DNA from: Botryllus schlosseri
Taxonomy: Eukaryota
Assembly: GCA_051294905.1 (NCBI GenBank)
Contig: CM119386.1
Location: 13,020,001 to 13,084,000, forward strand
Direction: 5' to 3'
Length of the DNA: 64,000 bases
Positions 23,301 to 50,300 of this stretch are shown one piece after another; the stretch's first letter is position 1; each line of letters begins with the position of its first letter. Below the pieces are notes generated by a model. It made no database searches. It worked only from the letters and a program-made list of their open reading frames with translations, and was not told the origin of the DNA. The translations under genes and the position numbers were made by a program.

Positions 23301-26300
23301 GCTTCAGTTAGGATATTGTGAAACATTGACCATAACACCATGCCAACCTAGTTGTTGCATTTGACCATTTATGATTCACAATGAGCAGATAATGGGTCGT
23401 ATACAGCGGTAGGCCTATAAAGTAGGCTACACGCTGTAAAATATCGAATGATAAGTTCACAGACAGTGCAAAATCTACGATGCAAATGAAATGCAGAGGT
23501 CAAAAATATTTTTACTCAGTAAACTATTTTGACAAAATTTTAACATGTCAAAAAAAATCGCCCTATTCATAACTCATCATTCATTGTAATATCATCTCAT
23601 ACCACCAAATTGTCACCTTGATGATCATGAAACACAAATGTATTAGGGTACCTAGTGTTGGGGTCAAGTCACTGCCTTTGAGTCACAAGTCATTTCGAGT
23701 CATTGCGCATATTGACTCAAGTCAAATCAAGTCACTAGTCAAGTCAGGATGAATTTGCAACGTACGAGGCATACAAATATACAATAAGTCCACATTTATT
23801 CTTAATCAACGAATGAATATAGAGTTGAATACATAAAGGCGCTGTACAGCTGACTCGAGTCATCCCAACACTGGTATTACCTAAACTAAACTTGTGCACC
23901 TTTTTTACATTAGTGACCGAGGAAACGTCAGCCTATTTCACGCTGAGCTTTTAATTTTCCTTTCAGGACAAAGTCTTTCCATTCATGGAAATCATGATTG
24001 GTCATGTCGTGTGTATGTAGGCGTGGACCCATTTTTTCATGCTATATTAATAATGCCCATCGCAAGAGTTGCCAATTCGAGTAGGGGTTCAGCATATGGG
24101 AATACATATTGTATGTGGGTTGGGAAGTATTGGCCTATCATTTTGTGATGTAACGGAAGCGTAATGGCTAAATATGTATTGTATATAATGAATGCTCTCC
24201 CAGGTATGTTTTAATGTTCACTCAGCCTACATTTTATCATCGACATCCTGAATCATAATCCTTTAATCTCCATGACTATTCTGTGCATGCTGCTGTTAAC
24301 ACTGGTCCAAAACGCCAGCACATCCATCTGCTTCCAAGTAACGCTTAGTGCTATTATTACTTGTCCCTATAATTTGAGCATCACCTTTGTCCTCTCTTGC
24401 CGACACTCCCACCATGTTACATAACATTGAATTTTTGTTTGAAGCACTTGAACAATATTGAATGCGTGAACATTCTGAGGAGATTAGGCTGTCCAACATC
24501 CTCGATTGGCATGTTATATTCTTAATAATACAATAGACGGTGATGATTATTTTCGATGTATTTTAATTGTGGTCGCTTTTTTTTCAGTTTATCGCCGCGA
24601 ATGACAAGTTGCACTTTTGGTTCGAGCTGAATTCGTTGGTCGACTTTTTCACTGTTCCGCCAGTTTTCGTTTCTGTGTATCTCAATCGTACTTGGCTAGG
24701 TGGGGTCGCATTCTGCTTTTCAGAAGTTCCAGATATCTTCGATATTTGAAATTAGACATATACCGGAACTGTCAAACCTTTCATGCTCTTGCCAGGGGTT
24801 GGACTTGTCTTGATACTGCTATTTTGCTTCCATCACCCGGCAGACAGTTTTGATGGATTATTATATAATGAATAAATAATAATAATCGTTCAGACATGTT
24901 ATTAATTGGATAGTATTGAATAGTATATTGAAGTTCTGTACCCCCAAGAAGCTCTTCTAATTGGATAGTGTATTCATATTGAAACGAATCTGAATATTTT
25001 CGGCTGACACTCAAGGGTAATCGTCATCACCTAGTAGAGAATTGGAAATTGCTGACGTCATCACCTAGTAGAGAATTGGAAATTGCTGACGATTACCCCT
25101 GACGGGTGTCAGACGAAAATATTCGGTTCATTTCAATACGAATATGCTATTAAATTGTATATTGAAGTTCTGCACCTCCAAGAAGCTCGTCAAACCTTTT
25201 ATAAACTTCAAATGTTCCCGCTCACCCGTAACAGTTCCTATCATAAAGCTATTAAGAAATTTTCATCCCCCGTATATCTCAAATGAAGATTATGTAGGAA
25301 ATATATCCGCATTTCAAAATATGTAACAACCAGATATTGTTGCATAGCTGTGTTTTTCAGGGCTGAGGTTTCTTCGTGCACTTCGTCTTTTACAATTCTC
25401 CGAGATTCTGCAATTTGTTAATATTTTAAAAACTAGCAACAGCATCAAACTTGTGAACGTACTTTCCATATTTTTGAGCACGTGGCTCACGGGCGCCGGT
25501 TTTATACATTTGGTGAGGGCTGCATATGTAATTGCGCTAATTCGTGTATAAACTCGTGATCTCTTGCAGGTTGAAAATACGGGTGATTTTTGGCTAGGAT
25601 TTAGCAATGCCAACAATATTACGTATTGGGAATGCGTTTATCTTTGTATGGTAAGTTTTTTGTTTATCTTCAATAATTCTGTAGAAATTGACACCTTAAT
25701 TTGCTAAAGATGCGGACATAAACATTGAACGGGTTGTTGATATCTCCAAATACAGTTGATCAAGTAGCTCGGAGGGAATGTATATGATGCATTTTCAAGT
25801 CATAAGTCACTACCACTGCCATGCGAGATTCTAATCCCATAAATCAATAAACTGGACTGATCATCCATAAAATGCTAGCCTGAAATATCTTCTTTGCGGT
25901 TCTTAATGTATTCCGAAGCACAGATATTACTTATTTATGGCATCCACCAGCAGACGTGTACAAAGTCGTGGACGATAGGCTGTGGGGAATCTTGGTATTG
26001 TATGATTTAAAATAAGGCTTGTTATACAGGTAACAATGTCAACTGTGGGATATGGGGATTTGGTGGCGAAGACTACACTTGGTCGTCTCTTGATGGTACT
26101 TTTCATTTTGGTCGGACTTGCTATGTTTGCCGGATCGGTTCCAGAAATTATGGAACTCATTTCGAACAGACGAAAGTACGGCGGCGCCTATACGTCGGTT
26201 AGCGGCAGGAAGTAAGATATATGGTTTTCTGTTATATCTGAAATTGCTGGAGATCCTGCGACTTTCTCTCCTCTTTATAAAGGCGGTGTTGCATAAACTC

Positions 26301-29300
26301 TGATACTCATAATGATAGTTTTATCATCATCATCATCATAATTTCATCATCATATTACATCAATACACCACAATGTTGTGATATAACGAAAAGATAGGAG
26401 GTTGCCGAAACGACTTTGAGTGGGCGAAGGCAACCAGTTGTGCACTAGACACTTGTAATAAACATCATGCATTACAAAAAAACTCATAGATTCAGTGATA
26501 TTGATGTCACTGAAATTTATCACGTATGGTATTTTCAATGCATTCGCATTATACTCTACAATACATGTACAATTCTACATCAATGGTTTTCATTCGTTTT
26601 CTAGTCACAATCTCCTGGCAGGAAATGTTCAGGCTAGCGGAACCCTGAATCATTGAAATTAGCACTAAACAGCAGTGTAGCCTACTTATTTAGCATGTGA
26701 AATGTTGGAAAAATTTAAATGACAACTCATGAAACCATTTTGTCTGCAGCCATATTTACTGTAATGGCAGTAACTGATATAACATGCTAGTTGGAAAACG
26801 TTGCTGTGATATCGGGAGTTGAAGCTTAGTAAGTCAGACAGCAACTTTTCCTCTTCTGCCTTGCCCACATATTACCGGGGCAAGTTAAAATTTTACAGAG
26901 AAACCGAATATCAGGGTTTGGTACATTTTTCATGAAAAAGCCATAACACAGTAAGAATAGTTCTGCGCATGTCACTTGTTGGCTATGGTACCTAACCCAA
27001 TGGACTTGGCAACATATAGAGTCTCCTCAGAACACAAGACTCCTTTGCTCAAAGATACTTTTTTCCAATGAATTCACCGAATATTATTTCTTCAATCGAT
27101 CGCTCTGGTGCGTTTGCGACCCAAATGACTACCCTTCATGAACCACAATTTGAGAATCACTGAACTATGACGTCCAAGGTGTTTAGATCAGTGGTTCTCA
27201 ACCTTTTGACCTGGTGGACCGATAAAACTTCAAAACAAATGTTGCGGACCGGTGAGCCTTCGAAAATCACAATTTACATTAAATTTAATGATGAAAAATG
27301 TATGCAATTCAAAAGTAATATTGGAAATTTCATTTAATGCTGCCTTTTTGGTGTTATATATTTGTACTTGGTCTTATTGAAGTTTCTGTGAGAAGCTAGC
27401 AAAGTCAGTTAAGACCAATAACTTGATTGTGAGTGTTGGGCTCTGTTGAAAGAAAGCGAATTTGTTTTTTGCTGTAGCCTCTAATGCCAAGCTTAATCGC
27501 AATGACTGAAGTTAATTTTGTACCCATCTATATATTTCACGTATAACTTGCCACGGACCGATGGTTGAGAAATACTGGTTTAGAGGATCAGATGGCCTAG
27601 ATCTGGCACAAGATCCAAACTCGGTTTATCACGCTTGTGTTACACAAGTATCAGATGATTTTGTTTCTTCTGCATCCAGCAATTTTATTGCTATAACAAA
27701 ACTCGGTAATTCTGTGCCTTATTGTACCGGTATCGTATTTTGTACGCTATCTACTCTACAACATGAATATGAGCAATTCCATTGCATTTCCATGCGTGAT
27801 TTTCCTGCTGTATGAGGTATCATATGTGAATTGCATAGAGCTCTAACGCATGGCATCATTACTTATATAGCACCTTGATCCCTGTGGAATACATATCATA
27901 GCTACAGACTTGGCCTCACGCAAGATGCAGGATTGACGTATCACGTTATGCTGCAAAGGTCTTCACCTTTTATTTAGTATACTAGTCCCTTGCCAAGCTC
28001 TATTTCAAGTATCCAGTTGCAATGAATGTGAGCTTGCTATATATTCATAGCGGCATTTTCGGTGTTTTCGTAAGCAATATGACATGGTATTCATACCGTA
28101 TATGAAATAATCACCACCATCATACAAGGCAATCAACTTCCGTTGGGGAATATCATTAATATTCTCTAGTGTCCATAGTTTGACTTATTAATCCCAGTGC
28201 TAGGAAACGAGTCGTGTTACTCCTAATATCAGTCATAGGTCATATGTAGAAATTACATGGTTGGGTCAATCGGACATCCATTATATATGTGTCATGTTAA
28301 TTCTACGTCAATAGAGGGAGTTACGGTGTCAGTCGAGTATGTGTAACATCTGGTTAGATCCAGCAAAGTTTGTTTGTTGACTAACCCAAGTTATTCCATT
28401 AACTCTTTGCGATTATACTGGTGAATCATGTTGTTTCTAATTAAAAGACGGGGATTTCAATCATTTTGTTACTGATACTCGCCAATGCATCAAAATGTGA
28501 CAGTTGCACAGAAGAACTGGTGGCTTTCAAACGTTTAAAAGGAATAATTTGCTACATTCACAAACCTGAAGAATGTCTTCATGTTGTTATGCATTGGAAC
28601 AGGTTCTTGGAGAATTACAATTCACCCAGGTCTAAAAAATTTTTTTGGTACATGATAATCCAGTTTGTTTAAAATTCATTTTGTCCTCTTGAGAATGCAA
28701 CCTGTGTATTCTTTGTAAAATTCGATTATATTCGTGGCATTTTGCTGGATATTTAGGAACAGCTATGTGAAACATGATCCATATTTTGTGCGTTGCTGTT
28801 GATACTACTTTGACATTCAGCACCATGAAATACCATACTCTAGTTTTTCTGTGTTTATATAATGATGAAGAACTGGTACTTAATACCCTCATTCAGTTTA
28901 ATTTTGGCATGGACAGGAATTTTGACATGAAACCATGTCAGAGTAGTCACGTTGTTATTTTGGAAGATTGTGTTAAGCTTGAATAATTTATGCAGCCACT
29001 TTTTTTCAGGCATATTGTTGTGTGTGGACACATAACGCTGGAAAGTGTTTCATATTTTTTGAAAGACTTCCTACACAAAGATCGAGATGATGTCAACGTT
29101 GAGGTTTTATTTTTACATGGGTGAGTATCTTTTAGCAATTCCAATTTTTTTTATCTTTCAATTTATATTCTTGTTAGCGTGTAAAGTTTTGAGCAGCTTC
29201 GTGCCAATCATATTAATGTCATCTTCTCGGTTTTTGATTTCCTAATTTGCAGAGTCTTTCAAGATCACTCAGTCTGATTACTATGTTCATTACAATCAAG

Positions 29301-32300
29301 GGCTCAAATGAATTTTTTCAGACGAAATCAAACCATTCAAATTATTTATATAACACAATAGTATTCAAATGTTAATGTCTGCATATTTAATGCTCAGTAT
29401 CAAAACTAGCTTACGTTGTAGGAATTGTGACCTGCCTCCAATCATTTGTTCCCAGATCAGTTAATTGCGAACCATATAGTTCTCATTGGTCCGCTCTCAC
29501 TTACAATAAGGAATCGTAGTGTGAGGAAATGCATGCAAAACATTTTTGTCCAGAATTCAAACCCTGCAAAATCGTCCGTTACGATTTCAATTCAATCTTT
29601 TAGTAACAATTTTATCATTTCAATACACAACAAGACTGCGATACAATGAAAAGATAGTAAGGTGCCGAAAGGACTTGGAGTAGTCTGAAATCAGACACCC
29701 ACCTGGCCTAGGTGATGTAAAAAGGAGGGAGGCATGCACAGTGAATGAAAATTAAAATAAGGTAATGTAAAAAAACAGGCGACAAAAAGAGGTGCAAGTG
29801 TTGGAAGGCGAGACCGATGTGTCAGGTCCTGGTCCGGTAAACTTGAGGGCTGATTGATTTCACCTGTACCTCTCTGCACCATATTATCATCTTCCTACTG
29901 TACTGTATTGCTTTGAAGTATATAAAGTTATACACAAATACTTTTCCAACAGTTTGTCTCGTGTGTTCTATGTGCTAGTAAAGGCATACCGATCGTAATA
30001 GTCCATAACATAAAATGTCATAAATAGAGCCAGTAGATCACAATATGAGCAGAGTAATTATGAACTTACCTTTGAAAAGTTTTTATTGAAGTTTATTAAA
30101 AAATTGAGGTGTGAGGGTAAGACGAGACAAAATTGCGGGGTGAGTTGAGACACCGGTATCTGATCGATTTTCTATTGAAAGAAATTAAATTTTCCAATAC
30201 AGTTTTAACTGTTTACAGCACAAATGATAGTTATCTAGTAGTTAGCTCGATGCGGCAGCACAAGACAAAACAAGAACACAGGGTCCCATGTATAATTTGC
30301 TTTCGATGGCATTTAAAATCATATGATGTACAAATCCGTTTCAAAAGTGGATTATTTCATGATTACTAAATTTAATTTACGATGCTACTAGCTGATTCAG
30401 CATTTGGGATGAATTGGTGCTGTATCGAATAGGAATTGCCTGGTGTTTCATCCTGAACACAGTGTGTCTCATGTTACCCTCACCTGGGGGTACTTTAAGA
30501 CATTGGACCAAGGATTTTTGAAGCCCAAAAAATCCTGTAGTACGTTGTTCAATATATCTCAAAACGGATCACAGGCTTTGCATCAGAACCAAAATTTATG
30601 CTCTGAAGGCATTACTTTTTGAGTGGCGCTGAAAGACATAAAAAGTGTCCCATCCCACCCTCTTCTACGCAGAGCAAATTACAATATATTATCAAGTGGT
30701 ACTTTTTTCTATTTAATGCAGATAGTAGAATTTTACACAAACACTTTTTCAGTCAAACGTCAATACCAAAACCGGTCCGCATCTCTACTAATTTCCATTG
30801 AAACACAATCCGTGTCCAGGTTATAATTTAATTCAATATCCTCTTCTGCAGGATACCCCCAAACTTGGAGCTGGAGGCCCTTTTCAAACGGCATTTCACC
30901 CAAGTGGAATTCTTCGAAGGTTCTGTGCTTGTGTCGAGCGATTTGTCTCGGGTGAAAATCGAGGAGGCTGACGCCTGCGTCATCTTGGCCAACAAGTATT
31001 GCGAAAACGCGGATACGGAAGACGCCTCCAATATCATGAGGTAGTCTAATTCCGGACTGTAACTTGTTAATTGCGGAAGTGGTTTCTTAATCCAGCCTGG
31101 GAACGCCCTAGAGATTTGAGAAGATTCAAGATTATCGATGTGGCAAGATCTTACCCTGCTTGCTTTTATTTTATGCCCGCTCGAGGATCCTCCCTATCTT
31201 TTCATTGTATAGCAATCTTTAAAACCATTGTATCAATAAAGCTGTCAATAAACAAATGAATGAAAGTGTGTAGTCGGTAAATTCAAAAGCTACCGGTATC
31301 TCAACTTCAATACTGCTACATTGTCGCATATTTATTTAACAAAGTCCCTTAATCAAGTTCATGACAGAGGTTAAAAGGTTTGCTGACACCTTTCTGAACT
31401 ATGGTAACGACATAGTGCATGTATGGACATCAGCAAAGGTGCTCATGAAAGTTACTGCATTGCCATTTCATAAAAATATTGATGATATGATTGTAGGGTT
31501 AATGAGCATAGCTTACATAGTCTGTTACATGAGCTATTTGTGATTCGACAAATCTTGTGATGTATTAATCACGTTATTTTGTTTTATTCCAAAGCTTCCT
31601 TGGAGACTACACTGCATTTCGTTATTTAAAAGCCACTCCTGCGATTCAGTCCTGGAGAACAACACCCCAACTATTACTGAAACAAACGTGCTTCTTTTTC
31701 AGAGTGATATCAATAAAGAACTACCACCCGAAAGTGCGAATCATCATTCAGATTATGCAGTATCACAATAAGGCTCATCTGCTCAACATACCCAGTTGGA
31801 GCATTGAGGTTGGTTTTGAATACGGAAATAGCAGCGTGCGAATTCACCCAGGCGTCAAAACCGCTAAGAGTATCTATATATCCGAATTCCCTACGGTATA
31901 TTTCGATTGAAGTTTCCAAACACGATACTTAATATCATTGATAATTCTTTATGATGACCATCTTATTTTTCCGCTGCAAACCTTCCGATATGAGTTATAG
32001 TCGAGTCCTCAGTGATGTGTATTTCTGTTATTTTGATTTGAATGCTTGGTAATATGGTGTTTGCCTATTCTCATTGTAGTTGATTCATTTAATTCTGTGA
32101 CGTATGCCATTGAGTCCCGTGGGAGACAAATACCGACGGAGATAGTATTAATGATATCATCTCTTTCAAGGCGCCAAATAATCAGGGATATTGGTCTTGA
32201 ATCAATTTCTGGTATTTGGTGGGGATATTGATTTTGCTTCAAATGAATATCAACTGCCATGAAGTTACTTTAAAGATTTATTGACACAACAATCGATACT

Positions 32301-35300
32301 CTTATTGTAGACTTGAAGGGGAAGTCGTAGATCTTGACATATACATGCTACGTCACAAATATTTACCCTGGGCAAAATCGAAACTTTGTACTGCAGCTTA
32401 AAAGTCAATAGTTAAATGACTGAATGAATCTGAGCGACTCAGCTTAGCTTCCCTGGTATTTTATGGCCTAAAGATTGCTTTTGACTACTTTGTTTCAGGA
32501 TGGCGACGACGTTATATGCCTTGCCGAATTAAAGCTGGGTTTCATCGCGCAGTCATGCTTGGCGCCTGGATTTTCAAGCTTGATGGCTAATTTATTTTCG
32601 ATGCGATCTTACATTAAGGTAAACTTCTTCATTAACAATTCTACGACGTTTGTCGTAGGAAGTAAGATAAAATTCCACCTATGACAGATATTCTAATAAT
32701 TTTTCTTTATCAATATGGTCTTTCCCGTAGTAGGGGTCCGTACAGCGGATCAATGATACGGTTTATAGTGTGACTGAATTTTTATGCGGTGTACCCTTAT
32801 TGCCGCAACCCTACCCACTGTGAACGTCACTGGAATGGATTTCACTCCTCAATGACTGGGTTTTAGAGTCACAGTCGCCAATGCGATTTGAACCCAAGCT
32901 TTTAGATTGGCAAGTTCACTGCTCTAAACACCGAGCAACGGTGACTGTTGACTGATTTTCTCATAATAGCCATCAAAATTCATAACGGTGCATACTTTAG
33001 AAACATTCGGATGGTGCAGATTGAATCACGAACTGAACATTGATTTACTCGCCATGTCATATGTCAGAGGTCCTTATACTGGGGTATGCGGGCTAGTTTT
33101 AAGGGGCCACGAAACGCCAATCATGAAACTACAACTACAAAACTACATGTTTCCTTGATAAGATCTACCCTTATTCTTGATTATGTCCTTATTTTGTCTT
33201 ATTTTCAGTACATGTCTCCTTTTTGATATTATCAAATAGCTTTTTCAGCATCAACTAGACCAGATGGCAATATGGGGCCGTGATAAGGCAGTAACCTTTT
33301 TTTGTGATCAGCTCCCTACATTTCACGGTTAGGCTACTCAGAATTTTTGTATTTCCTTAATTTTTGATCTATATCAACCGAAGTCCTGGATGTGCGGTTC
33401 AAAGGTTAATTACTACTGTCATTGGTAATGCTGGACGGTGTCATCTCTGCAAGTGTGGCAACTATTATGTTTCCACATTACTTGAGCGCTTTCCAAAAGC
33501 CTATTAATCAGTTACGAACTGATATCTCTCAGCAAACTGCGGTTCTCAAGATCTATTTTCGCAATACCCATCGATGCATATTTTCCCAAGGCTCCCAGAC
33601 TTCGGGTGGTTTACGCTTCGAGTCAGGGATGTTCAACGTGCGGACTGCAGAGAAAAACTGTGGCCCACAAACGACTGCTCAATGTTTTGAATTACTTGTG
33701 GCCATCGCAATCGGTTTCTAATTACCTGAGTCTGATATGTTTGAGCTAAGGTCAATTAGGAATAGAGAAGTGCAAAAAACTGTAAAATCACTAACATATG
33801 CATATGCAAACTTCGTATATAAATATATTTTTGACTAAATCTATTCAATAGCCATTCTTTTCCTTCAGATATTCATGATAGTTATCTGCAGTATGATATC
33901 TAACATTTTTGATATCGCCATCACCATTACCGATTCCTAATTAGATTGTGGTCCTTCCAACCAGGAGAAAGTTTAGGTGATGTTTGTATCTGGTCTGCTT
34001 GTCAAAAAGGCTACACACACCTGCTTTGAGTGATCGTGTAAGGTCTCAGAGACTTGATTTGGCCCAGCCCTGCTGATAACTTGTTTTCGGTGAACCTGGT
34101 GGTTATGATGTATGTAACAAATCATAGAATTCTTGATCATCAATATGTTGTATATTGAATGGGCGTCAGCTTTATAAATTATTTGTTTAGCGTAAAATAC
34201 GGCTAAGCGTAAATACTGTCATACAACCTCACGTCGTGTCTGAAAGCTTGTTTATGCCCGAGGATTATTACGGAGGAAAACATTCGATCGGTAATTTTGA
34301 CAACAATATTATTTATTTATAGATTGACGCTGACTCGTGGCAGAAACATTATCTGGCCGGCGTCGGTTCCGAAATGTACACGGAATACATGTCACCGTCT
34401 TTTGTGGGTTACTCATTTCCTAAAGTGTGCGAGTAGGGAAAATGTGTGCTGCGTATCGAGTAGATATTCTGCAAATTTTTTTTCTTTTCAGAATATGCTA
34501 CAAAAAACTCAAACTGCTCCTCCTCGCTATTGAAGTGAAGCATGAAAATGATGAGTGCAAGTGAGTATCGCAACCAGCAGCCCAGCTGACGTTATTCTGT
34601 ATCAACTCAAAGTATGAAAAAGGATACTCTTTGGATTGGGAAGGACCCGGAAACCTTCGAAATTATCTTTTTCATTAAAACTATTACAAGCACCTATCAT
34701 TATGGTTGCGTCTTTCACAAGAACATCGCTAAAACCACAAACATTACCGGTATCAAGATTGATCCCAATGATGAAATAAGATTTAAAAATATTCCATGTC
34801 GATTTAATTGTTGAATTCGTTTTCATGACCGTGAATGTTAATGTATTCGATTAAACTCCCATGGGAAATGAAAATTTCAGATCTCTATAACAGTATAACT
34901 TGTCTCTACTATGTAATCAAATGGGCTCAAATTTCAGATATGTCACAGATATAAGTTATAAATTTTGCAGCCATGGGAATGTGACCATATCAAACCCCGT
35001 TAGAACTATCTTGGCTATTTCTTTTTCAAAACTCACGATAACATCTTCAGTTGCTTAGTGAGGCATAGGATGTAGAAAATACTTTTATGACAAAGTAGAC
35101 GTTGTAATTTCCCAGTCAACCCAAGACTGTAATTTTTTGTTTTACAATAGCTCTACAAATAGATATTGGCGACAATAAAAATTCATGAGTAGAGTTCTGT
35201 TTGAGGAACATGATATTAAGTATGTAGGCGACGGTTATTGGCTGTGTAGCCTCATAAATATTACAGGAACTAAACGTTGTCAATACTAGCTGGTGTGTAA

Positions 35301-38300
35301 AGTTGTGAGATTATTTCAGCAACGGCCTATTTTGTAGTTCATTTCTTCTCGAAATAGATATCTTGTAGGTACTCTTCAGTGAGTAAGAGGCTGACGCAGT
35401 TACACAGAATAATCAGGTGTGCATTAAAATTTGAGGATGTGTTATCTTTCTTTTGGTCCTTGGGCACACAAATGTAAAAACAATTTCTTGAGTGCTTACT
35501 TGTAAGAAATTGGTATTATTTGCAGTTTTCCGTCACCGTCACATCAAAATGTTTTCATCCTTTGGCCTCAATCCTTATTGCATTAAATATCGAAAAAGCT
35601 ATGAAGATCATAACTCAACTCATAAAACCTGACAACACTATCAACAGAACAGTATGGGCGCTTCTTCGTTATTGGTGTGTATATTTATTAGTGATGTGTT
35701 TCAACAAACAGACTTAGTCAAAGTCCAAAATATGATAATGTAATTGTATGCAAATGCATATAATACTTTGACGTGATTACACATTGTCGATACACAACAT
35801 CACTCCCATTAACCGTGCAAAGACGGACTTTATTTTGTTATTATATCACAATTATGACTTATGCTGGGTTGTTGTATTCATTTTTCCAAACATGTGATTA
35901 GGTTGGTGTAGTATTCAAATCACTTGGATTCCAGAGTTTGTGGATTCATGTATTCATTGAGTTTTTCCATACTGATCCGCAGACTATGTTTATATATAGG
36001 TCGGTATGAAAAATTGTGATCACCTAAAATTTATCTCATCAAAGTACTTTTAATGTAATGAAAACAAAATGTCAAAATAAATGTCTTTCAGCAACACACT
36101 TCCGCGAAATATTCTCCAACGCAGTTACAAGCGGTACGTTGATACCTGCCACATTATTTCCGCGCACCTGCCTGACAAAACAAATTACAGTCGTTACATC
36201 ACAACGCTTGTCACATTGCATGAGGCCTACTACTGGGATTCTCTGACACCAATATCTTCCTGCTTTTCCATTTCCTCATTTTCTCTAGCGCAGTATTTAT
36301 TTTCATTGACACGTAGCGTCTTGGCTTGATCACAATTCACAATTAGAAGCGGCCTACAAAAGGTGAACATGAAATTGTCATTTTCTAATGAAAATGGCCT
36401 TTTGTGGTGCCTTCTTCAGCCGCACATCCGCACATATTTTTCAGTAGGTATGCGAGTATGCAGTTATATGAAATCATCTGTGAATCCTCTAACTGCTTCC
36501 CTTATAAGACACATCAATTTTGTAATCAATCTTACGAGCCCAACATATCTTAGTTTTGATCAAGTTTCGTGAGTCTTGTAGGGCAAGGATTTATGCTGGC
36601 ATTTTTCGTGGGTGCATCACTGATGACAGCACTTACTTTTAATCCTACATTGAGAAACTTGCTATTTTATTACCCTCACTCTGCATGTTGTCATATTTTT
36701 TTAAAATTCATTCACTTTTCAAATACCCATGGTGAAAAATCCATATCGTTGCACGGAATGAGACGATCTAGCTCACCACTGGTATTGGGTTATTACCACC
36801 ATCAAACTTGAATAGGATAATCTCCGTTGTACAAAACATTCTGCAGACATATTTTCAAGATGACTGCCGTAGTTAAAGAAAACATCATAGCTAAAAGTTT
36901 TTGTGCTTATTGATGTCGAGACTTGGTTAACTCACTAAATCAGTGGTTCTTAACAGCGGGCCCGCGTCTGCTCCAAATATATTTCAAATTTATTATCAAT
37001 TGCCAATGCCTGTCCATTAATTAGAGAAATTTGGTCGGATCTAGAAATTAAGACTGGAATTGAGAATTCTTTACGGCATGATGTAGACTTCATGGTCAAC
37101 TTTCAACTTATCCTATGTCACAATGCTGCAAATGTTGTTGTTAATGATTTTAAAGTAGGCTACAACTCATAAACCGGTACGTGAAAGCTAAGGCGACGCA
37201 AGCAAACTTGAGAATCACTGCTGTAGTTCACCTTAAATGATAATGTCGCAATATCAAAAATTCATGATTTCAGCAACATACATTTGCTGCGTTTTGCCAC
37301 ATTAGCCATCTCACATGCACATTGCCACTGCACTCACCAAATTCTTGTGGGTTTTGCATCTATTATGTTACACTCAATTTGATTTGGGTGCTTCCACTTC
37401 TTCAGAATCATGATTAACCCTGGGGACCATGTTACAATTCAAGAAGGAACACTGGGGTTTTTCGTTGCTCAATCTGCTAAAGAAGTCAAAAGGCAAGTTT
37501 GTTATTGAACCTTCACCATTGTGATGCAAGTATTGCATCTGAAGCGGCTGTATGAGAGATTGAAAGTATAATCGATGCATTGGGGTCTCAATTCACTTAT
37601 CATGATAAACTCTGATTCGAGATCACGGTAATGCAGTTGAAATGCTTGTTGAACTGGGATCATAGTTTATCATGATCAGTGATTTCGATTGGATGTTTCC
37701 AACCTATTGCTGTTATGAGCAAGAATTTCAACAAGTCAGATAACACATTGTACATTTGGTATATTGTCTATTTGATACGGCAACTACAATTTGCCGTCTT
37801 TTCTAAGCCATTTGGTTCTGTTTATTGCTGATAGCCTACCAAGAAAAGTACCAGTCAATTTACAGTTTTGATTCATTGAAACTGCTACACCTGCAGTGTA
37901 CAGCAGACTATACGATTTGAGAGGTATAGTTGTAGGCCTATACACTTGAATAGGCCTAATTTTGCTTGCTATTAGTAAATGGTGCTGCACCGTATTTAGA
38001 CAGCAAGTAATAAGGGATTTGCTGTTTATCTTTACAAATTTACTCCAATATCATGATATTTAAGTAGGTTTAACTCAGGGGCGGCCAACCTTTTCGTCCA
38101 AAGGGTCACACGAGATTATAGAACCATCGCGTTGGCCACTTGAATGCTGATGACATTTCTTTAGTTGTCCAATTGGAGCGAACGCATCAAAAGCGATAAC
38201 AATTATGTCATGAAGAGTCAGCGTGTATTCATATAATAACCGCACCAAACGCGAAAATTTTTTAAAGTTTATGAATGAATTCGGTCAATAATAATGTCAC

Positions 38301-41300
38301 CTGCATACATTGCGGGTCACCTATGTATACCGCTCAGCTCATTTGGCAAGGACAGGATTTCTCGGCTTTTGGACGTATAAATATCTAAGATTTCGGCAAT
38401 GATGCGTCAATCATTTCGTGCAAAGGTTTCATTTTTTGACTATCTTTCTGCGAGCGGACATGCTAAGTCGGATGCTGGACGACACGTTCTCTCATAATCG
38501 TGAATATAGTTTAGACTCAATTCTATAAATTAAGCGTATTTTTAATTTTCAGGAAGTGGTACCAATACTAAAAGCAAGAAATCGAGTGACTATTAATCGC
38601 GATCGAAAAATAGCAAGTCAAATAAATCTGCCAATAAATATTCTACTTTATCGTCATATACAAAGATAAACAAAGATTGTGGCTGGCCCCTGGCTACGAC
38701 AATGCAACGGAACTGATAATTAAGTCATCAGCATCACCAATTTCGCGGTCAAGTTAATCAAATTTTTGGTCGGCCTCGCAAGTTCACAATAAATTACCCC
38801 GATAATTTTTTATGATATAACTAATTTCCAGAATTACTCAGCGGGCCACAGGTTGGCCGCCCCTGGTTTGACTGTATGAGTCGTAATGCCCGATCTCAAC
38901 GTTCATACTGGTAATTGTTAGATAAAACCACTCATAATAGAAAATTTTAGAGGAAAATTGTGACCCTTGACCTGAAAATATTCTATATTTACAAGTTTCA
39001 TTGTCTAAGCACAAATTTCACTCATCCCAAACTCAATAATCACATAAGAATTCTTGACATGCATCACCGAAATGCTTTGATCTGCCGATAGTTTGTGTTA
39101 CCGTATTGGCTTGCTTGTGTCACCCTCACACATATCTCATATCAGTTTGCAGGTCCTAAGCTATCTTAGTCATGTGTGCTGCTCTTATGAGCATCCAGCA
39201 ACTATCGTCATTATAGCAAATTTACATGTATCGCTTTTATCTTTAGCAGTGTGTTTGGGTATCTGCCTAGTTCAATTTCACATGTGTGCTTAACGATAAT
39301 GTCAGCAGGAATATGGAACATCACTGTTTGTCATTTCGCTGTGATGCGGAAATTACAGTGACAATGGCCGCGTCACTTATCTATGCAAATATTCCATTTG
39401 TGTTTGTCTACATTTCGTAGGGATATCTAGATCATAATCCACATCTGGATATGCCAGATGTTGTAGGGGTCGGGCTTTGTAAAGGCGAGTACCTGAGTGA
39501 CATTTCAAGTCAAATATCCGCTGTTATCTGATAATGGCTCTAAATGACGCAGATTGTTTCATCCTATAATTTGGTTAAATTAAGTTATCTGATAATAGTG
39601 ATCACTACTGCTCATTTGATTTGTGCTGCTGTTGAAGGGTTGTTCAAAATTGACAAACTCTCACAAAGCCATTGTTTTCATTCAGCTTCCCCCGCATGTG
39701 TCAGCGCTGATGATAATAGTGAACCTATTAAATCGTATCAAAAGCAGGTTTTCATCGACTTATATGATGCGAAATGTCACAAATACGTCTCTTTGGAAAT
39801 TATTGGTGAGCGCGCGAGCCTATTAATACATACATTTGATAGGAGATACATCATCAGAGCACTACACACAGGAATTTGAATTAAGACACTGAATTCTTGA
39901 AAGTTTGTCAATTTTGAGCAACCAACTGACAACGCTGATTAGCTATATGTAGTGATTTCACGTGTATTTCCACCGCAAGCATTCTGTTAATCTAAAATTT
40001 GAAAATCCTAGGGCATATTTTTATTGTGAGAAATGCCATGAATATGTCATTGACGAGAAGAAGATACTTGTGTGCGAGCATATGAAACGTAAGCATTGTT
40101 TATTGCCTGCTACTTGTGGCACGGCACGTAGAGATCATTGGCAGCATGGCTCTAATTATTTTCGATATCTTCTATCCGCTGGATTTGGAGCAATGATGTT
40201 TGGAGTGACAGTGAATCTTTGCTGTTTATTGTTGATGTGTTTTCATGCATCGTTTGACTGTCGAACCCCGTTCATGGTGCACGAATCAAACCATTACGCT
40301 TAAAGTTACACTTAAACGTACATTGCATCGGACACGGTCTGGAATTTAGACTGCGGTTCGTAATATATTATGCCAAATTCATCCATCATATACAAAAGAA
40401 ATTGAAAAAAATTCAGTGGATTCTTCATTCCAGATCTGGTTTCTCTAGAATGGTTACCTTTGTAGGGTACACAATTTCATTCATGATATCTGAGTGAAGT
40501 AATATAACTTCAGTTGTGACATTCGGTGTAACGAAAAATGTCATGCACTTCTACAAAAATATGTGAATTGATTGTGAATTGTCACTTGTGAAAAATTGAA
40601 TTCGAACAGTAATCCAGCAATATTTTATACCTTCAGTAGGAAGTGAATCCAACGTAAAACTTCAGCCAATGCGTATCGCTGATTCCCTGTGGTATCCCCT
40701 ACTGGGGAAAGCCGAATGACAAATTAGAAAATGCATTTTTTGTTCTAGATGTTACATTTGCATATCAAATGTCAAAGGTGATTGATTGACATAGATCGTA
40801 ATCATAAAGTGATTGATTGAGAAAGATAGTAATCATATGGCATCACACGCATTACCAGACAAAATCCAATGCAATGCTGTAATTGAAGAATCTATCACAC
40901 ACAGTGACACAATATCAGAGGGAAGCTGCTGTATTTGTAATACAAATATTTCAATTATATGAAATTCTGTGCCTCTTTGAAAATATATTAGGCCTACTTA
41001 GCAGTTTTGTATGCAATCATCAAGAATTATGTAATGCAATCTATGTAATTATGCTGGTCTACCTGTTGATTCCTTACTTTCGTTGAGTGAATTTATTCTT
41101 ATAATTGCCTTCTTTACCATTGTGCTAATTCGATAATTTTGCGTAGGGCACTTTTTTACTGCCAATTGTGCCATGAGGATGTGTCAGACCCGGATTTGAT
41201 TAAATCATGTGAATGCCGGAGAAAAAGGGATTTTCCAAGTAAGAACGTTTAAGTGCTCGTACCAGGCATGCACTCATAATGTAACACGTAAATGTTCACG

Positions 41301-44300
41301 GCATTTTCTTGATTTTTCGTTTAACCAATAACCTTGTTTGGTTTCATGCATCAAATAACATTTTGAAGACCATTGGTTGAAAAATGTGTGAAATTGATTA
41401 TGCCATATTGTATGGTTTCATTGGCTACCTATGTAGTTCAAGATCCCCACCACTGCGTTGTTGATAATATCCACGTCAGTGTTTCTTCTGATGTGTTAAA
41501 ACTATGTTAAACAAGGTAGCTCAATGCAACATAGTTTGTATCACTGCTAGTATGATATCAAATGAAATTTAGTTCTACAGCAAGGTTTATACTTTTCATC
41601 AAAGAACAGAATGTATCACGGTATTGCCTTGGGTATACATCAGTGGTTTCCAACGTGGGCGATATCGCCCCCAAGTGGGCGATTTTGAGAAACAAGGGAG
41701 AAAATACCAAAGGGGGCGATGGGGGTGCGAAAATATTATAATGACCAGTGAGATCATGGCCAAAAAATGCACTTGAAGATGGTTTATTTTGCATATGACG
41801 CGAAAACCGGTTTTCCGTGCACCTACTCTGTCAATTCAAAAGCGATCAGAGTTAGCTGAATGAATGTCCCGTTTTTTAATACAATATGCAATACATTGGG
41901 TTATAATTTTCATCTGAACAAGCTACACATACAATGTACAATGCGATAAGACACAATGCAATGTAACGAACAGATAGGAGGATGTCGAACGACACGCATC
42001 AGTAGCGATCCTTTATATGTCCTCATTGCCGGATCCATAAACATGGGGGGCGAAAATTTGTGTCGAGCTTGATAAGGGGGCGATGAGTCCAAAAAGGTTG
42101 GGAACCACTGGTATACATGTACATAATCACAAAAAGTTGATCAAAATCCCCCTATCCTTACCTACGTAACTGATATCGTGACGATGGTTACCACTATTAA
42201 GTTGGCGACCGGGGCTACTGACCAATCATGGTCGAAGTCCTTTTAAATTTACAAACAGGAATGTTGACCAATGAATTGTGTATAAAAATAGTATATCTGG
42301 CAGTCACAAGGTAGGATATTGCTACATATATTTCAAACAATATGGCCTTTGTATTCCATTTTTGATATTTATTTGCATGAAATTCCATTGCTGAAAGATC
42401 GCTTTGTGATTGCCTAATTCTTACTATCACTGATAATAATTAGCTTGCATGGCTCTAATATCTCAAGTTTGGTTAGTGGTATGGTGCTGGTTTAACGCAT
42501 GTTTCGGTAGTGATGTTTTATTCTTTCTTTATTGACCTATTCCGCGCAGGAAGAGCAAAGAATATACAGACTTATAAATTTCCTGATAGCAAGCCAGACT
42601 CTGGTAAGTTATGTTGGGGATGTAGATATGAAAGATTGGCTTGCGCTTGTTCAAAATGGGATGAAATACAATTCTTCCTTAATTGGGCCGCAGTGTTTAT
42701 ATATTTTTTTTTTTGCTGGAAATATCGTAACGAACATGCCACGAAATAATTGAACCGATTTCTGTTCCAATAGTATGTAATGGATAGTGAAATCTCATAC
42801 ACCATGATTTAAAATACTGCATCAATGATTCGATACTAACCAATTCAGGGCTTCTATTTTGCATGCCCAAGTGAAAAATCAAGCCAAATCAACTTACTTG
42901 AAACATGAATTTTGTTAGAACATTGATGTATTCCTAGTTTCCTCTTTGATACTCTGTATAATAAGGTTACACCATGGAGATAGCAGTGTGGTTGTGGACT
43001 TGTGCTGAATATCGATCAGGCTGAATTCTTTTAACATTACTGCCTCCAGAGTTAAGCGTGCATCCAGATAAATGATGAACCTATTTCTACTCAATATATT
43101 GTTATCATAAGAAAAGGCCAGCTTACTCTGCCAGAATTACCAGTAACGTATTGGTTATTTCTGGAAATCATGACATACTGTAGCATATCTCTGAGTACAC
43201 TTGAGCATACTTGATGGTCTTATTACATTTATGCGGTTATGATATTCTTAGAAAATCGTAAAACTGCTAAAAGGCATAATCGTGAATAATTTGTATCAGA
43301 CTGTTGGAACCACAATACATTCAGTCATTGATACCTTACTCTGACAGTGTAAGCTAGGTCAGACGATTTTTGAGGATAATCAACCAGTTATCTCAATATC
43401 CCTGGGTTGGATTCAGCTGGTTCGCACGATTATACAGAATTGTCTCATGAAATTTTATGGGGTCAGCGAACCGGTTAGCATTTCTGGTAACTGTCAATCA
43501 CTTTTTCTAGCAGAACCACATTTAAAATTTGAATTTTAGTGATAGAACCAGCTGACAAAATATTGAATCCTACCACGGGAATCAACGTTACAAGATAACA
43601 CATCTGCCAATGATTGAACATATTTTGAATGCGGCACAATCCGGTGACCCAGATAATGCTGATCATTATTGGTCAAGATGGATTTGATTTATGAGATGAT
43701 TTTAAACAGACATTGTGTAAAAACTATGTAAGTTCCATAAAAGGTATCTAGTAGAATTCCTTATTTTTCCATCACGCGATTACCGTATTCTACTACCGTA
43801 TCCCTCTCAAAAGGGATATTGGTTTGTCTATTGAATTCTGTCCACTGTCAGTAGCCGAAGTAACATTCCGTCGACGAATTTGTTAAGAAATATATAGTTT
43901 TCATTTGATCTGTGATGGGTGTAACTCTTGACATTGATATCCATATTTTCTTTGTGGTTTGAAAGTAATATTGCCATATGTGGAAGAAAAGACCAAATAA
44001 GTGAAATTTGTAACTTTTTCTCGACTACGGCGGAAATTAAGCCTTTCGCAATTTTGATCGAAAGCAACTTTTAAGTTTCTTCTACTGGTAACTGTGGTAC
44101 GATGTATTGCAACAGTGTTTTGTGCTCCATACTTTGAATGTTGTGATGCAGACATGCAAGGCTTCGAAGCTCCATTGTTGAAAGGATAGGCTACATGAAT
44201 GAAACTATAATTTTTGTGAATGAAATAAATTTTAGTAGGCACAGGGATGCAAAGATTTGAACTGGCGCCACTTGGCACCAATCATTTCATTCAATATGTG

Positions 44301-47300: not shown

Positions 47301-50300
47301 CTTTGACAAATAATATTATGCTATGGCGTCATAATGAGTGATACTCGATTACTCGACTCGACTCGAAGCATTTTACGTGATTCAGAATCGAATCACTCAG
47401 GTACTCGATTTTGCCCAGCCCTAGTATTAAGCCAGCAGGTGCTTAGCGACAATAACTTTACCCAGCGCTGTAACACGAAATTAAGTTGAAAGATACCTGT
47501 TTTTCAAACTTCTTTTGATTTATTAATGAGACACTTGGATCGGGAACATGCACTCAGAGATATTAATGAATTATTGATGTCCCGTTATCTTTAGAAGTAC
47601 AAAAACTTATTGTCTGAAATGGCACAGCGTCACATTTTTTCATAGTATCCCATTTCTTTTGCATCATTGAACCAACGGGTAACGTAGTTCTACAAACTGG
47701 GAGCAGTAATATTGCAAGCATAAGAATATCGCTGCGTTTTGTGCCTACGTATCTACTTAGTTGTAATCAGGATTTTACGATCAACCACATGCAAAAATTA
47801 TACCCTCAATCCGCCGTGAACGGATTTCATCCGTATTATCATAATGTTTTCAGATATGCATTTGATCACTGTCTGTGTAACTTACAAAGTCGAAACATGC
47901 ATGTGAATGCTAATACATCCTGCGAATACTGTTGCATGCTACGAATGTGTCTGATTATCCTCCATTGTGATTTCTTTCAATTCGGTGACATTTCGATATG
48001 TTGTGTGTGTTCATTGGTAAAAAATAAACATTTTGCAATGACAGCAGTCGAAATGTTGCCGCCTCCATACGAAGCAACATCCGGTAAGGATTCAATGCAA
48101 TCTGGCAATCCGGAGTCTTCGAGACGCAGGTGATTTGGATTAGAGATTGAAGTATACGAGACTTCACTGTATAAATCAGTGATTCCCAAACTGTGTTCTA
48201 TAACTACTTCAATAGCTCATAACAACATATGACTAACATATTACGGCACTGTCGACAGGGAAAGGTAATTGCTACGTCATATTTAGGCTGCTAGATTAGA
48301 ATCAACTCGTGAACAAGGAATCATTCCGCAAATCATGGCGGCATTGTCCCACTTGTACTCCAGCATTATATCCCAGAATTTGCGGCTCAACAACTTTAGA
48401 CGGGTAGCGAAATCATTTGGAAGCAATGAATCAAACACTCGTTATGCAGAAAACGAATACTGTTTCATTGATTTGCGGATCAAACGATTTTCTCAAACGA
48501 CTTTTCCACAAAAAAATGGACCCGTTTTGACAGTCTGCTTCCAAATGCTATTCTATATAATCGATGCAAAAGCAATAATAATCATATTGGTCATTCCCAT
48601 ACATTTGAACATGTATTTCCTGTTTTGACAAAAATTAAAAGCTGCAAACGAGCGAAATTACCTCGAATTTAACACGAAATATGAGTAGCCTATGCGTCTC
48701 AATATTGCAACTTCGTTTCATCAGTATATGCTCAATGTTCGTTTAAAGAAGCACACTCATTAAAGCGTGAAAATAATTTTTAGACTTTTTTCCGCTTGTA
48801 AGTGCGCCGCGAGTGTCATATCATTTTTCTGGCGCGCCACAAGTTGAAAGATTTTGGGAACCATTGGCCTAAATAGTTGTGTATGCCAGGCATTAAAGCT
48901 GTGACGTATATCATTACATTTCAGTTTGATAGTATTGATTGGCCGAATTTTCGACGTGAGGTTATATTTCAGTGCTCCGGCAACTACAACAGTAATATCC
49001 TCAGTCGCGACCGCACCCAATTCGCAAGACGTGGATTCCGCGATGAAATATGACAGCACGGGAATGTTTCACTGGTGCCCATCTCGAGACCTTAGAAAGT
49101 GTATTTTGGTGAGGATTTCATTCCTTTTTTATTAAATCCATCGGGGTTTAAAATCATCGCAATGTTGCTGCTATCATTGAGATTATTGAAGATGTATACC
49201 GCAATTTTTCGTGACGTTTTATCACAAGAATGATCAAATACCTCGCATATCTTACAGAGCCTCGTACTCGTTTCGTATTTACTAACGCTGGTGAAACATA
49301 TCTTGATGGTGTTCGAAATTGCTGTTGACATCCTTGTTTAAATAGCATTCGAATGTGCACGCCTACTGATATCAATGTAAGGCTTACAGCGGTTTCCAAC
49401 TGGTTGTATTCGGTTTACCCTCACGCTTCACTGCCATGACTGCACTAATTCACAGTGGGTGTGTAATTGGCGCCCCACGGATGCATTTATGATTCGTTTT
49501 CGAGCCTTGGCTAGTCTTGGAGCTGGCAATCATTTATATAGACTAGAAGAGTCTCTGAGGTATCGCGGTGACACTAGCATCTTCATTTTTGGGACGCAAG
49601 AACACAAAAACATACTATGGAAAGAGTGAAAAACATTTGAATATTTCAGCCTCCTGTAACTGTTTTGATTCGATACAATCACCAGAGGCAATAGCATAGT
49701 GAGCTTTAATTTGGAATGTCTCGGTCATGGCTATGCTGGTTGTACTGAGTGGACACGTCTGATTTAACAATAGCTCTCTTAGGCCTGGTGTACAAGACCT
49801 TAGTAGTCAAGCACCATAAACCCCTTATACATTCATACATGCTTTCAACATGATTGATTGGGAACCGGCGTGGACCATGTCATAATGTCCCATTTCAAGG
49901 TATAATGTGAACCGATAAATTTCTCAGATTTTTGTCAAAAGAAAACTGGACATTCTCACTGCCTGCGGCAGATCAATATCCAGACGAAATTACATCCCCG
50001 CATTTTGTATTCAGAGCAGGGAACGGGCGTCGCACATCACTCTACGGCGTCACATTATAGCGTGCATTTTCGGCGATGCGAAAAGTCCTTTGCTCGGGTT
50101 GCGAAATTTTATCATGCCGCTGAGGGCATCCAACTTCCACTATCACGAGCTCAGGCCCATTGTGCTGCTCGGCGATTTGGACTTCATCAAACGAGAATGG
50201 GACACCATTTGCAACTTTCCAAAAGTGGATATTTTGCCTGTAAGTCTGTCTGGTTTCACACTGTTATGACACTGCAGCTTGCGAATTAACGGACTCCTAT

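What the first reader, a model, noticed from the sequence alone, without database searches (positions are those of the whole stretch)
40012..41238. Duplicated, mutually exclusive exons give two versions of the BK heme-binding CXXCH linker
Seen: two paralogous exons 1.06 kb apart, 17a ([26 protein letters not shown], 77 nt) and 17b ([31 protein letters not shown], 92 nt). Both run phase 2 to 1 with good splice sites, so including both (169 nt) frameshifts and exclusivity is enforced by frame. Known: this segment is the vertebrate CKACH heme/redox motif followed by a CGC pair. Both copies keep CXXCH, but 17a has lost one distal Cys and 17b keeps both. Inference: a splice switch tuning heme, redox or metal sensitivity. 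I know of mutually exclusive Slo exons at other positions but not at this linker; novelty needs a literature check.
Basis: partly seen in the sequence, partly recalled or inferred. Interest (0 to 1): 0.88.

Follow-up and report, generated by a model that had tools for sequence, protein, structure and literature searches.

The report
Two alternative BK-channel linker exons
A potassium-channel (BK/Slo1) gene carries two tandem copies of the small exon that encodes its conserved CXXCH "heme" motif; messenger RNAs use one copy or the other, and a distantly related species keeps both, so this is a real, old splice switch of a familiar kind at a position not reported before.

Summary
Exon 17a (40012-40088, 77 nt) and exon 17b (41147-41238, 92 nt) are paralogous. 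Both have AG/GT borders and the same phases. Including both, or neither, breaks the frame.

RNA-derived contigs join the upstream exon (end 37492, GC donor) to 17a and, separately, to 17b. Each alternative exon is joined to the downstream exon at 42550. Exon 17b is also joined to the exon at 48045. No 17a-17b joint was seen. In run X13 the word depth was about 7 for 17a and 19 for 17b.

A relative with saturated synonymous sites (pS 0.85) keeps both exons in the same order, with the same 77 and 92 nt lengths and the same splice sites. The a-type keeps C..CH...CEH.K and the b-type keeps C..CH...CEC plus a basic tail. The duplication is therefore old and both copies are under selection.

In 120 hymenopteran and 120 teleost isoforms, alternative exons lie elsewhere and this exon does not vary.

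Tandem, mutually exclusive Slo exons are a well-known kind, so this is a new member at a new site. The heme, redox or metal reading is untested. Earlier notes of this scan touched the neighbouring 42550 cassette but not this pair.

The parts
37404..37492 (+). Constitutive upstream exon (…[29 protein letters not shown] + AG). It ends in phase 2 and is followed by a GC donor (gcaagt) that both alternative introns use.
   Evidence: tblastn to Slo1 proteins; sequence; joints from 37492 (reported as 37490, ambiguity 3) to both 40012 and 41147 in RNA contigs
40012..40088 (+). Exon 17a, a-type linker exon, 77 nt, phase 2 to 1. Encodes [25 protein letters not shown] (CXXCH kept; distal pair is C-E-H; no basic tail). 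It is the minor form in the run where both were seen.
   Evidence: One 133-nt RNA contig in run X13 holds upstream exon, 17a and the 42550 exon (depth 7). The orthologue in L001 at 10144-10220 is also 77 nt with ag/gt.
41147..41238 (+). Exon 17b, b-type (canonical-like) linker exon, 92 nt, phase 2 to 1. Encodes [30 protein letters not shown] (CXXCH, C-E-C, basic tail).
   Evidence: Joints 37492>41147 in X11 (depth 22.4, 849-nt contig) and X13 (18.7); 41238>42550 in X13; 41238>48045 in X11. The orthologue in L001 at 11337-11428 is also 92 nt.
42550..42603 (+). Downstream 54-nt cassette exon ([17 protein letters not shown]). It is joined to either 17a or 17b and is skipped in the X11 contig.
   Evidence: joints 40088>42550 and 41238>42550 with GT..AG ends
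48045..48083 (+). Next downstream 39-nt exon ([12 protein letters not shown]), joined directly to 17b in run X11.
   Evidence: The loose end behind 41238 in X11 is identical to window 48045-48074.

Best explanation
The gene is a Slo1/BK channel alpha subunit on the + strand. The ancestral 77-nt exon encodes the end of RCK1 and the start of the RCK1-RCK2 linker (CXXCH followed by CXC). It was duplicated in tandem before this species and the species of contig L001 diverged. Splicing from one GC donor at 37492 chooses either 17a or 17b. Because 77 and 92 are not multiples of three, mRNAs with both or neither exon are frameshifted with early stops, and are presumably removed by nonsense-mediated decay (inferred). 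Only single-exon mRNAs encode a channel. This gives two channel isoforms. The b form is canonical: C-x2-C-H-x11-C-E-C plus a basic tail, [RK]RK[RK]. The a form is five residues shorter, has no basic tail, and has the nearly invariant last Cys replaced by His (C-E-H). In solved human Slo1 structures this segment aligns to the model up to residue ~630-632 only in Ca2+-free or binding-site-mutant states, and to ~613-617 in Ca2+-bound ones. My best inference is therefore that the switch alters a state-dependent structural element at the RCK1-RCK2 boundary. That would change gating set-point and/or sensitivity to ligands of the Cys/His cluster (heme, redox, metal). Shown here: the exon pair, its mutually exclusive use and its deep conservation. 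Inferred: NMD of the out-of-frame forms, regulation of the choice, and every functional consequence.
For: Gene identity: tblastn of Slo1 proteins covers the pore ([10 protein letters not shown]), RCK1, the Ca2+ bowl ([28 protein letters not shown]) and the C-terminus. Transcripts: 37492>40012 and 40088>42550 lie in one X13 contig; 37492>41147 appears in X11 and X13; 41238>42550 in X13; 41238>48045 in X11; no 40088>41147 joint was seen. Conservation: L001/L002 carry an a-type exon (AYIYCKDCHNDIDDIRKMQTCEHFK, 77 nt) and L001 also a b-type exon (ALLYCESCHEDIACPDQIKVCECKRKKELA, 92 nt), in the same order, with ag/gt and identical last exon bases (AAC|gtaag, CAA|gtaaga). Synonymous sites between the two species are saturated (pS 0.85 over 347 codons, dN 0.075). 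The a-a (dN 0.42) and b-b (0.31) distances are smaller than all a-b distances (0.53-0.72). The vertebrate orthologous exon is single, 77 nt, with the same phases. In 32 diverse Slo proteins C, C, H and the first distal C are invariant, and the last C is Cys in 30 and His in 2. The AF2 model gives pLDDT ~91 and ~74 for the two 10-residue blocks covering this segment.
Against: Transcript evidence comes from assembled contigs of only two runs whose RNA nature is guessed by the tool. The spliced GT/GC-AG joints argue that they are RNA. Contigs show presence, not absence, so rare double-inclusion or double-skipping forms cannot be excluded. 17a was found spliced in one run only, at about a quarter of the summed 17a and 17b word depth. 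Two raw bulk RNA-seq runs had no reads on the gene at all, so nothing is known about tissue or stage specificity. Both exons evolve fast (48% and 61% amino-acid identity between species, against 87-97% for most of the neighbouring exons). With 25-30 codons, dN/dS cannot be estimated once dS is saturated. No functional assay exists for either isoform, and heme binding has only been shown for mammalian channels.
Confidence: 0.85

Rival explanations
1. 17a is a decaying duplicate that is spliced in occasionally as noise. Only the 17b isoform matters.
For: 17a is the less canonical copy. It has lower word depth (7 against 18.7 in X13) and was not seen spliced in X11. Its amino-acid identity between species is only 48%.
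Against: At saturated synonymous divergence a neutral pseudo-exon would not keep an open frame. Nor would it keep the exact 77-nt length, both splice sites, the same terminal bases and the positions of C, C, H, D, C, E, H and K in two species. The 17a mRNA is in frame on both sides.
Confidence: 0.07
2. The switch is real, but what it changes is linker length and charge (the five-residue basic tail of 17b) and hence gating-ring mechanics, trafficking or phosphorylation. It does not change heme, redox or metal chemistry.
For: The CXXCH motif and the first distal Cys are identical in both forms. The conserved differences are the tail [RK]RK[RK][DE]xx, the PD motif and Cys/His at one position. The segment is aligned to the model only in Ca2+-free or binding-site-mutant human structures. 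Known Slo splice sites cluster at domain boundaries and shift gating (Fodor and Aldrich 2009 as cited).
Against: The one Cys that changes is Cys in 30 of 32 diverse Slo proteins. The replacement is His, another metal/heme ligand, in both species. That pattern looks like selection on ligand chemistry.
Confidence: 0.4
3. Exon choice is dictated by competing RNA secondary structures (docking site and selector sequences, as in Dscam or 14-3-3zeta) rather than by frame and NMD alone.
For: Many mutually exclusive clusters that arose by tandem duplication use this mechanism (PMC6071210). A 53-nt inverted repeat lies just upstream of 17a.
Against: No sequence complementary to two selector-like sites, one near each exon, was found among 23 inverted-repeat pairs. 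The intron sequences are not alignable with L001, so conservation could not be shown. The frame rule already suffices for exclusivity.
Confidence: 0.1

Closest known systems
Mutually exclusive tandem exons of insect slowpoke (Drosophila sites A, C, E; Lagrutta et al. 1994, as cited in PMC9741552)
   Same: The gene family and mechanism class are the same: tandem exon duplication and one-of-a-set inclusion. The isoforms differ in a short homologous segment of the cytosolic gating apparatus.
   Different: The position differs. In 120 hymenopteran isoforms the alternative segments are the S6-RCK1 linker (three versions), the RCK1 exon FQGTIMNPIDL…, and the exon TLSPTFIGMPF…. The CXXCH exon shows only single-residue differences. 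The window gene has no duplicates at those three sites. The events are therefore independent.
C. elegans slo-1 and human KCNMA1 tandem-duplicated exon events (PMC9741552; Fodor and Aldrich 2009, Annu Rev Physiol 71:19)
   Same: Lineage-specific, non-orthologous duplicated exons recur in Slo genes at domain boundaries. The present pair sits at the RCK1/RCK2 boundary and fits that pattern of convergent evolution.
   Different: From what I could read, those events are placed on the human gating-ring structure and described as unrelated events that coincide in one region. I found no text placing any of them on the CXXCH exon, and I could not read Fodor and Aldrich 2009 in full.
Vertebrate splice site 2 (STREX) in the RCK1-RCK2 linker
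   Same: It lies immediately downstream of the same exon. In teleost isoforms variation begins right after …CGCKR. The window also has optional cassettes (42550, 48045) at that junction.
   Different: STREX is an optional insertion, not a replacement. The CKACH…CGC exon itself is constitutive and single in vertebrates (77 nt).
Heme regulatory motif 612-CKACH-616 of human Slo1 (Tang et al. 2003 as cited in PMC2266614; PMC12346439)
   Same: Both 17a and 17b keep C-x-x-C-H at the homologous position.
   Different: Heme binding, the Cys612-Cys615 redox switch and CO effects were shown only for mammalian channels. Nothing is known for this animal. The residue that differs between 17a and 17b is the second Cys of the distal CxC pair, which is not part of the defined heme motif.

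Membership tests
Slo1/BK channel alpha subunit | K+ pore signature TVGYGD with S0-S6 membrane part | tested here: met
   [10 protein letters not shown] at 26030-26212, and N-terminal/S1-S6 exons aligned to Slo1 proteins
Slo1/BK channel alpha subunit | Two RCK domains with the Ca2+ bowl DQDDDDDPD | tested here: met
   RCK1 exons 29008-37492 are 65-89% identical to vertebrate Slo1. [28 protein letters not shown] lies at 54183-54335.
Tandem-duplicated mutually exclusive exon pair | Adjacent exons that are homologous in sequence | tested here: met
   12 of 25 residues are identical and DNA identity is concentrated in the exons. No other match in the 64 kb window.
Tandem-duplicated mutually exclusive exon pair | Same splice phases; each exon alone keeps the frame, both or neither breaks it | tested here: met
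   Translations of all combinations
Tandem-duplicated mutually exclusive exon pair | Mature transcripts contain exactly one of the two | tested here: met
   Contigs show upstream-17a-42550 and upstream-17b-42550/48045, and no 17a-17b joint. Limits: assembled contigs from two runs, so rare forms are not excluded.
Tandem-duplicated mutually exclusive exon pair | Both copies conserved in related species | tested here: met
   L001 has both, with identical lengths and splice sites, at saturated dS. Only one relative had a contig long enough to test.
Insect slowpoke sites A/C/E (orthology) | Alternative exons at the same protein positions | tested here: not met
   Insect alternative segments map to other exons, and the CXXCH exon shows no alternative version in 120 isoforms.
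CXXCH heme regulatory motif of Slo1 | C-x-x-C-H at the end of RCK1 | tested here: met
   CEKCH in 17a and CQLCH in 17b. These residues are invariant in 32 Slo proteins.
CXXCH heme regulatory motif of Slo1 | Heme binding and inhibition of the channel by heme | not testable with these tools
   Needs expression and patch-clamp or spectroscopy
RNA-structure-controlled MXE cluster (docking/selector type) | One docking sequence complementary to a selector next to each alternative exon | tested here: inconclusive
   No such arrangement among 23 inverted repeats. Short or imperfect stems would be missed, and there is no alignable intron from a relative.

The most novel reading that the evidence does not exclude
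The five conserved ligand-type residues C-x2-C-H-x11-C-x-C form one functional heme/metal/redox cluster at a state-dependent element of the gating ring. On this reading, this lineage evolved a regulated splice switch, kept across a divergence deep enough to saturate synonymous sites, that toggles the last ligand between Cys and His and removes a basic tail. That would give neurons or muscles two BK channels with different sensitivity to heme, CO, oxidation or Zn2+. It would be a natural experiment showing that the distal CxC pair, so far without an assigned role, is part of the sensor.
Probability: 0.2. Interest if true: 0.7.

Novelty: new member of a known kind. Interest (0 to 1): 0.5.

Why it matters
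Slo genes are the textbook case of convergent evolution of alternative exons at domain boundaries. This adds an independent, old event in another animal lineage, at the RCK1-RCK2 boundary. The exon involved is constitutive in the vertebrates and insects examined here. Because the pair differs at a nearly invariant Cys (to His) next to the heme regulatory motif, it offers two natural, selected sequence versions. With them one can test what the conserved CXXCH…CXC cluster does, and whether heme/redox regulation of BK channels is ancient. For annotation, it shows that gene models of this locus need two isoforms at this exon.

Tried and rejected
1. Two raw bulk RNA-seq runs (X23, X30) were laid on the stretch and gave no reads on any exon of the gene. 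They say nothing about usage.

2. A full-length protein search with a vertebrate query was filled entirely by teleost isoforms. It was useful only to show that the exon is invariant there.

3. I tried to bias a profile toward the window's clade by aligning single exons to a sea-urchin scaffold. This produced a scrambled MAFFT alignment (A2), which I discarded.

4. The locus of the Polistes isoform could not be fetched because only the longest product is on record. I compared 120 isoforms instead.

5. Relatives P0408 and P0004 had no retrievable DNA. L003, L004 and L008 end before the linker.

6. A JGI metagenome scan with the upstream exon found only a vertebrate contig (L009). It has a weak 'YFYCKSCYQ*' match in the intron upstream of the vertebrate exon. 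This lacks the His and an acceptor and ends in a stop, so I treat it as chance.

7. An Rfam scan of 37300-43200 found nothing.

8. The inverted-repeat scan gave no docking/selector pattern.

9. Fodor and Aldrich 2009 could not be read in full. Only its citations and my recollection of the abstract were available.

10. The AF2 coordinates could not be read in scripts, so Cys-Cys distances (a test of a metal cluster) could not be measured.

11. The species is coded. Earlier notes of this scan call the genome a tunicate; I did not verify this.

Full report
**Observation.** Exon 17a (40012-40088, 77 nt) is bounded by …cctag| and |gtaagc. With the two bases AG left by the upstream exon, it reads [26 protein letters not shown] plus one base. 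Exon 17b (41147-41238, 92 nt) is bounded by …gcgtag| and |gtaaga and reads [31 protein letters not shown] plus one base. The upstream exon (…[12 protein letters not shown]) ends at 37492 and is followed by GCAAGT, a GC donor. Either exon alone continues in frame into the exons at 42550 and 48045. Both together run into a stop, and so does skipping both. The motif A-x-[FILYW]-[YFW]-C-x-x-C-H occurs only twice in the six-frame translation of the whole window, at these exons. A self-comparison of all recognisable exons of the gene finds no other tandem paralogue. Chance is not a reasonable explanation.

**The gene.** tblastn of Slo1 proteins from a representative search places a BK/Slo1 alpha-subunit gene on the + strand from about 20.9 kb to beyond 57.4 kb. 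It has the pore ([10 protein letters not shown]), RCK1, the Ca2+ bowl ([12 protein letters not shown]) and the C-terminal part. The species is coded by the tools. Earlier notes of this scan call the genome a tunicate, which I did not test. The closest vertebrate exons are 65-89% identical.

**Transcripts.** I laid four runs on 37300-43200.
- The two raw bulk RNA-seq runs (X23, X30) had no reads on the gene.
- Two older runs kept as assembled contigs were informative.
- In X13, one 133-nt contig (depth 7) holds the end of the upstream exon, all of 17a and the start of the exon at 42550. Its joints are 37492>40012 and 40088>42550, the latter with GT..AG ends.
- In the same run, other contigs join 37492>41147 (depth 18.7) and 41238>42550 (depth 5.8).
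- In X11, an 849-nt contig (depth 22.4) runs from the exon ending near 34560 through 37404-37492 and 17b. It continues with 30 letters identical to 48045-48074.
- The first joints are reported two bases to the left, with an ambiguity of three. Only the GC…AG reading gives a legal intron.
- No contig joins 17a to 17b.

So both exons are spliced into mRNA, each directly to the same upstream donor and to the same downstream exon, and never together in these data. The caveats are as follows. These are assemblies from two runs whose RNA nature the tool only guesses, although the spliced joints argue for RNA. Assemblies show presence rather than absence. 17a was seen in one run only, at roughly a quarter of the summed word depth of 17a and 17b.

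**Conservation.**
- A 15-kb contig from another species (L001, with a second run L002) was reached through an ORF that contains a neighbouring exon.
- L001 carries the same gene with shorter introns. Most of its neighbouring exons are 87-97% identical in protein.
- Between the orthologous flanking exons it has, in the same order, an a-type exon (AYIYCKDCHNDIDDIRKMQTCEHFK, 77 nt) and a b-type exon (ALLYCESCHEDIACPDQIKVCECKRKKELA, 92 nt). Both have ag/gt, the same phases and even the same last three exon bases before the donor. L002 shows the a-type exon and ends before the b-type position.
- Over 347 codons of constitutive exons the synonymous difference is 0.85 per site, which is saturated, while dN is 0.075.
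- Neutral sequence at that distance retains nothing. The survival of frame, length, splice sites and the Cys/His pattern in both copies therefore means purifying selection on both.
- The non-synonymous distances a-a (0.42) and b-b (0.31) are smaller than every a-b distance (0.53-0.72). The duplication therefore predates the split.
- Conserved a-type marks are Tyr at position 2, C-E-H-hydrophobic-K at the end, and no tail.
- Conserved b-type marks are Leu at position 2, H-E-D, P-D, I-K, C-E-C and a basic tail [RK]RK[RK].

**Wider distribution.** Three more distant, intron-poor marine metagenome contigs (L005, L006, L007) have a single b-type linker that directly follows the upstream exon sequence without an intron. 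A vertebrate contig (L009) has a single exon of 77 nt with the same phases, [25 protein letters not shown]. So 17a and 17b are duplicates of one ancestral exon. 17a has kept the ancestral length and 17b the more ancestral sequence. Only one relative with a long enough contig could be tested, so the age is bounded only by that split.

**Is it known?** Tandem, mutually exclusive exons are classic in Slo genes.
- Drosophila slo has three such events (PMC9741552; PMC6071210).
- C. elegans slo-1 and human KCNMA1 have unrelated ones.
- The recurrence of lineage-specific splices at domain boundaries is the thesis of Fodor and Aldrich 2009 (cited). I could not read that paper itself.

To see where the insect sites are, I aligned 120 hymenopteran slowpoke isoforms. 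Alternative versions occur at three places:
- the S6-RCK1 linker (three versions);
- the exon FQGTIMNPIDL…;
- the exon TLSPTFIGMPF….

The CXXCH exon shows only single-residue differences in that set. In 120 teleost isoforms the exon is invariant, and variation starts right after CGCKR, the STREX site. A review lists four mammalian splice sites, none replacing this exon (PMC13674577). Full-text searches for such a pair, or for tunicate BK splicing, found nothing. The event is thus a new member of a known kind, at a new position. It may still exist silently in automatic gene models of this species, which I could not see.

**How it probably works.**
- Exclusivity follows from the frame rule, with nonsense-mediated decay of the out-of-frame products. 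That last step is inferred.
- The intron between the exons is 1058 nt, so steric exclusion is out. No docking/selector stems were found.
- Both acceptors have poor polypyrimidine tracts, and the shared donor is GC. These features are usual for regulated exons.
- Each alternative exon in both species has a (U)GCAUG within about 100 nt downstream. This is a lead, not evidence.

**What the switch changes.**
- In an alignment of 32 diverse Slo proteins the two Cys and His of CXXCH and the first distal Cys are invariant. The last Cys is Cys in 30 and His in 2.
- 17a replaces precisely that residue with His, in both species, and drops five residues of basic tail.
- An AF2 model of RCK1 plus this segment gives pLDDT of about 91 and 74 over the two 10-residue blocks that cover it.
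- Human Slo1 structures without Ca2+, or with mutated binding sites, align to the model up to residue 630-632. Ca2+-bound ones stop at 613-617. Some Ca2+-free entries also stop near 615, so this is a trend rather than a rule.
- The exon therefore encodes a structured, apparently state-dependent element at the RCK1-RCK2 boundary, next to the heme regulatory motif 612-CKACH-616 (PMC12346439; PMC2266614).
Neither can be tested with sequence tools.

**Verdict.** The structural interpretation is supported. The functional interpretation remains open. The kind is known, and the site and lineage are new. I score interest as moderate.

Noticed in passing
window 41890-42015 (intron between 17b and the 42550 exon): The stretch has enormous depth in all four runs (word depth up to ~31,000; thousands of raw reads). 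Nearly all reads fit only partly and run on into other sequence. It is probably a fragment of an abundant, transcribed repeat. There is no Rfam match.
   Followed up: partly
window 37493-37498: The donor shared by both alternative introns is GC (AG|gcaagt), whereas the relative L001 has GT (AG|gtcggt) at the same place.
   Followed up: partly
window 39638-39690 and 39871-39923: A 53-nt inverted repeat (79% complementary, 180 nt apart) ends about 90 nt upstream of the 17a acceptor. It could be a MITE-like insertion or a splicing-relevant hairpin. No counterpart could be checked in the relative.
   Followed up: no
window 40144 and 41266; L001 10254 and 11528: Each of the four alternative exons (two species) has a GCAUG or UGCAUG within about 30-100 nt downstream. 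Only one of the four (L001 17b) has one within 300 nt upstream. This could be Rbfox-type enhancers of inclusion.
   Followed up: no
window 42550-42603 and 48045-48083: The 54-nt cassette is joined to both 17a and 17b in run X13 but skipped (17b joined straight to 48045) in run X11. The junction right after the alternative pair is therefore itself variable, like the vertebrate STREX site.
   Followed up: partly
window 34532-34560: The X11 contig differs from the window at two synonymous positions in this exon. That run therefore comes from another haplotype or strain.
   Followed up: no
PDB entries aligned to model m9b0af0e7a955: Human Slo1 chains align to the model through residues 630-632 in Ca2+-free, EDTA or binding-site-mutant structures (6V3G, 6V35, 8V60, 8V63, 8V64, 7YO4, 9CZJ). 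Ca2+-bound ones align only to 613-617. Some Ca2+-free entries (9CZK, 8VAZ, 7YO2) also stop near 615. The CKACH…CGC segment seems to be ordered in a state-dependent way.
   Followed up: partly
L005, L006, L007 (marine metagenome contigs): These are Slo1 genes with few or no introns in this region and a single b-type linker. L005 looks like a cDNA-type sequence with a frameshift and long Asn-rich stretches in the linker.
   Followed up: partly
L009 5393-5419: In a vertebrate KCNMA1 contig, the intron upstream of the CKACH exon has a weak match 'YFYCKSCYQ' followed by a stop. It has no His and no acceptor. It is most likely chance, but a very old relic of a duplicate cannot be excluded.
   Followed up: partly
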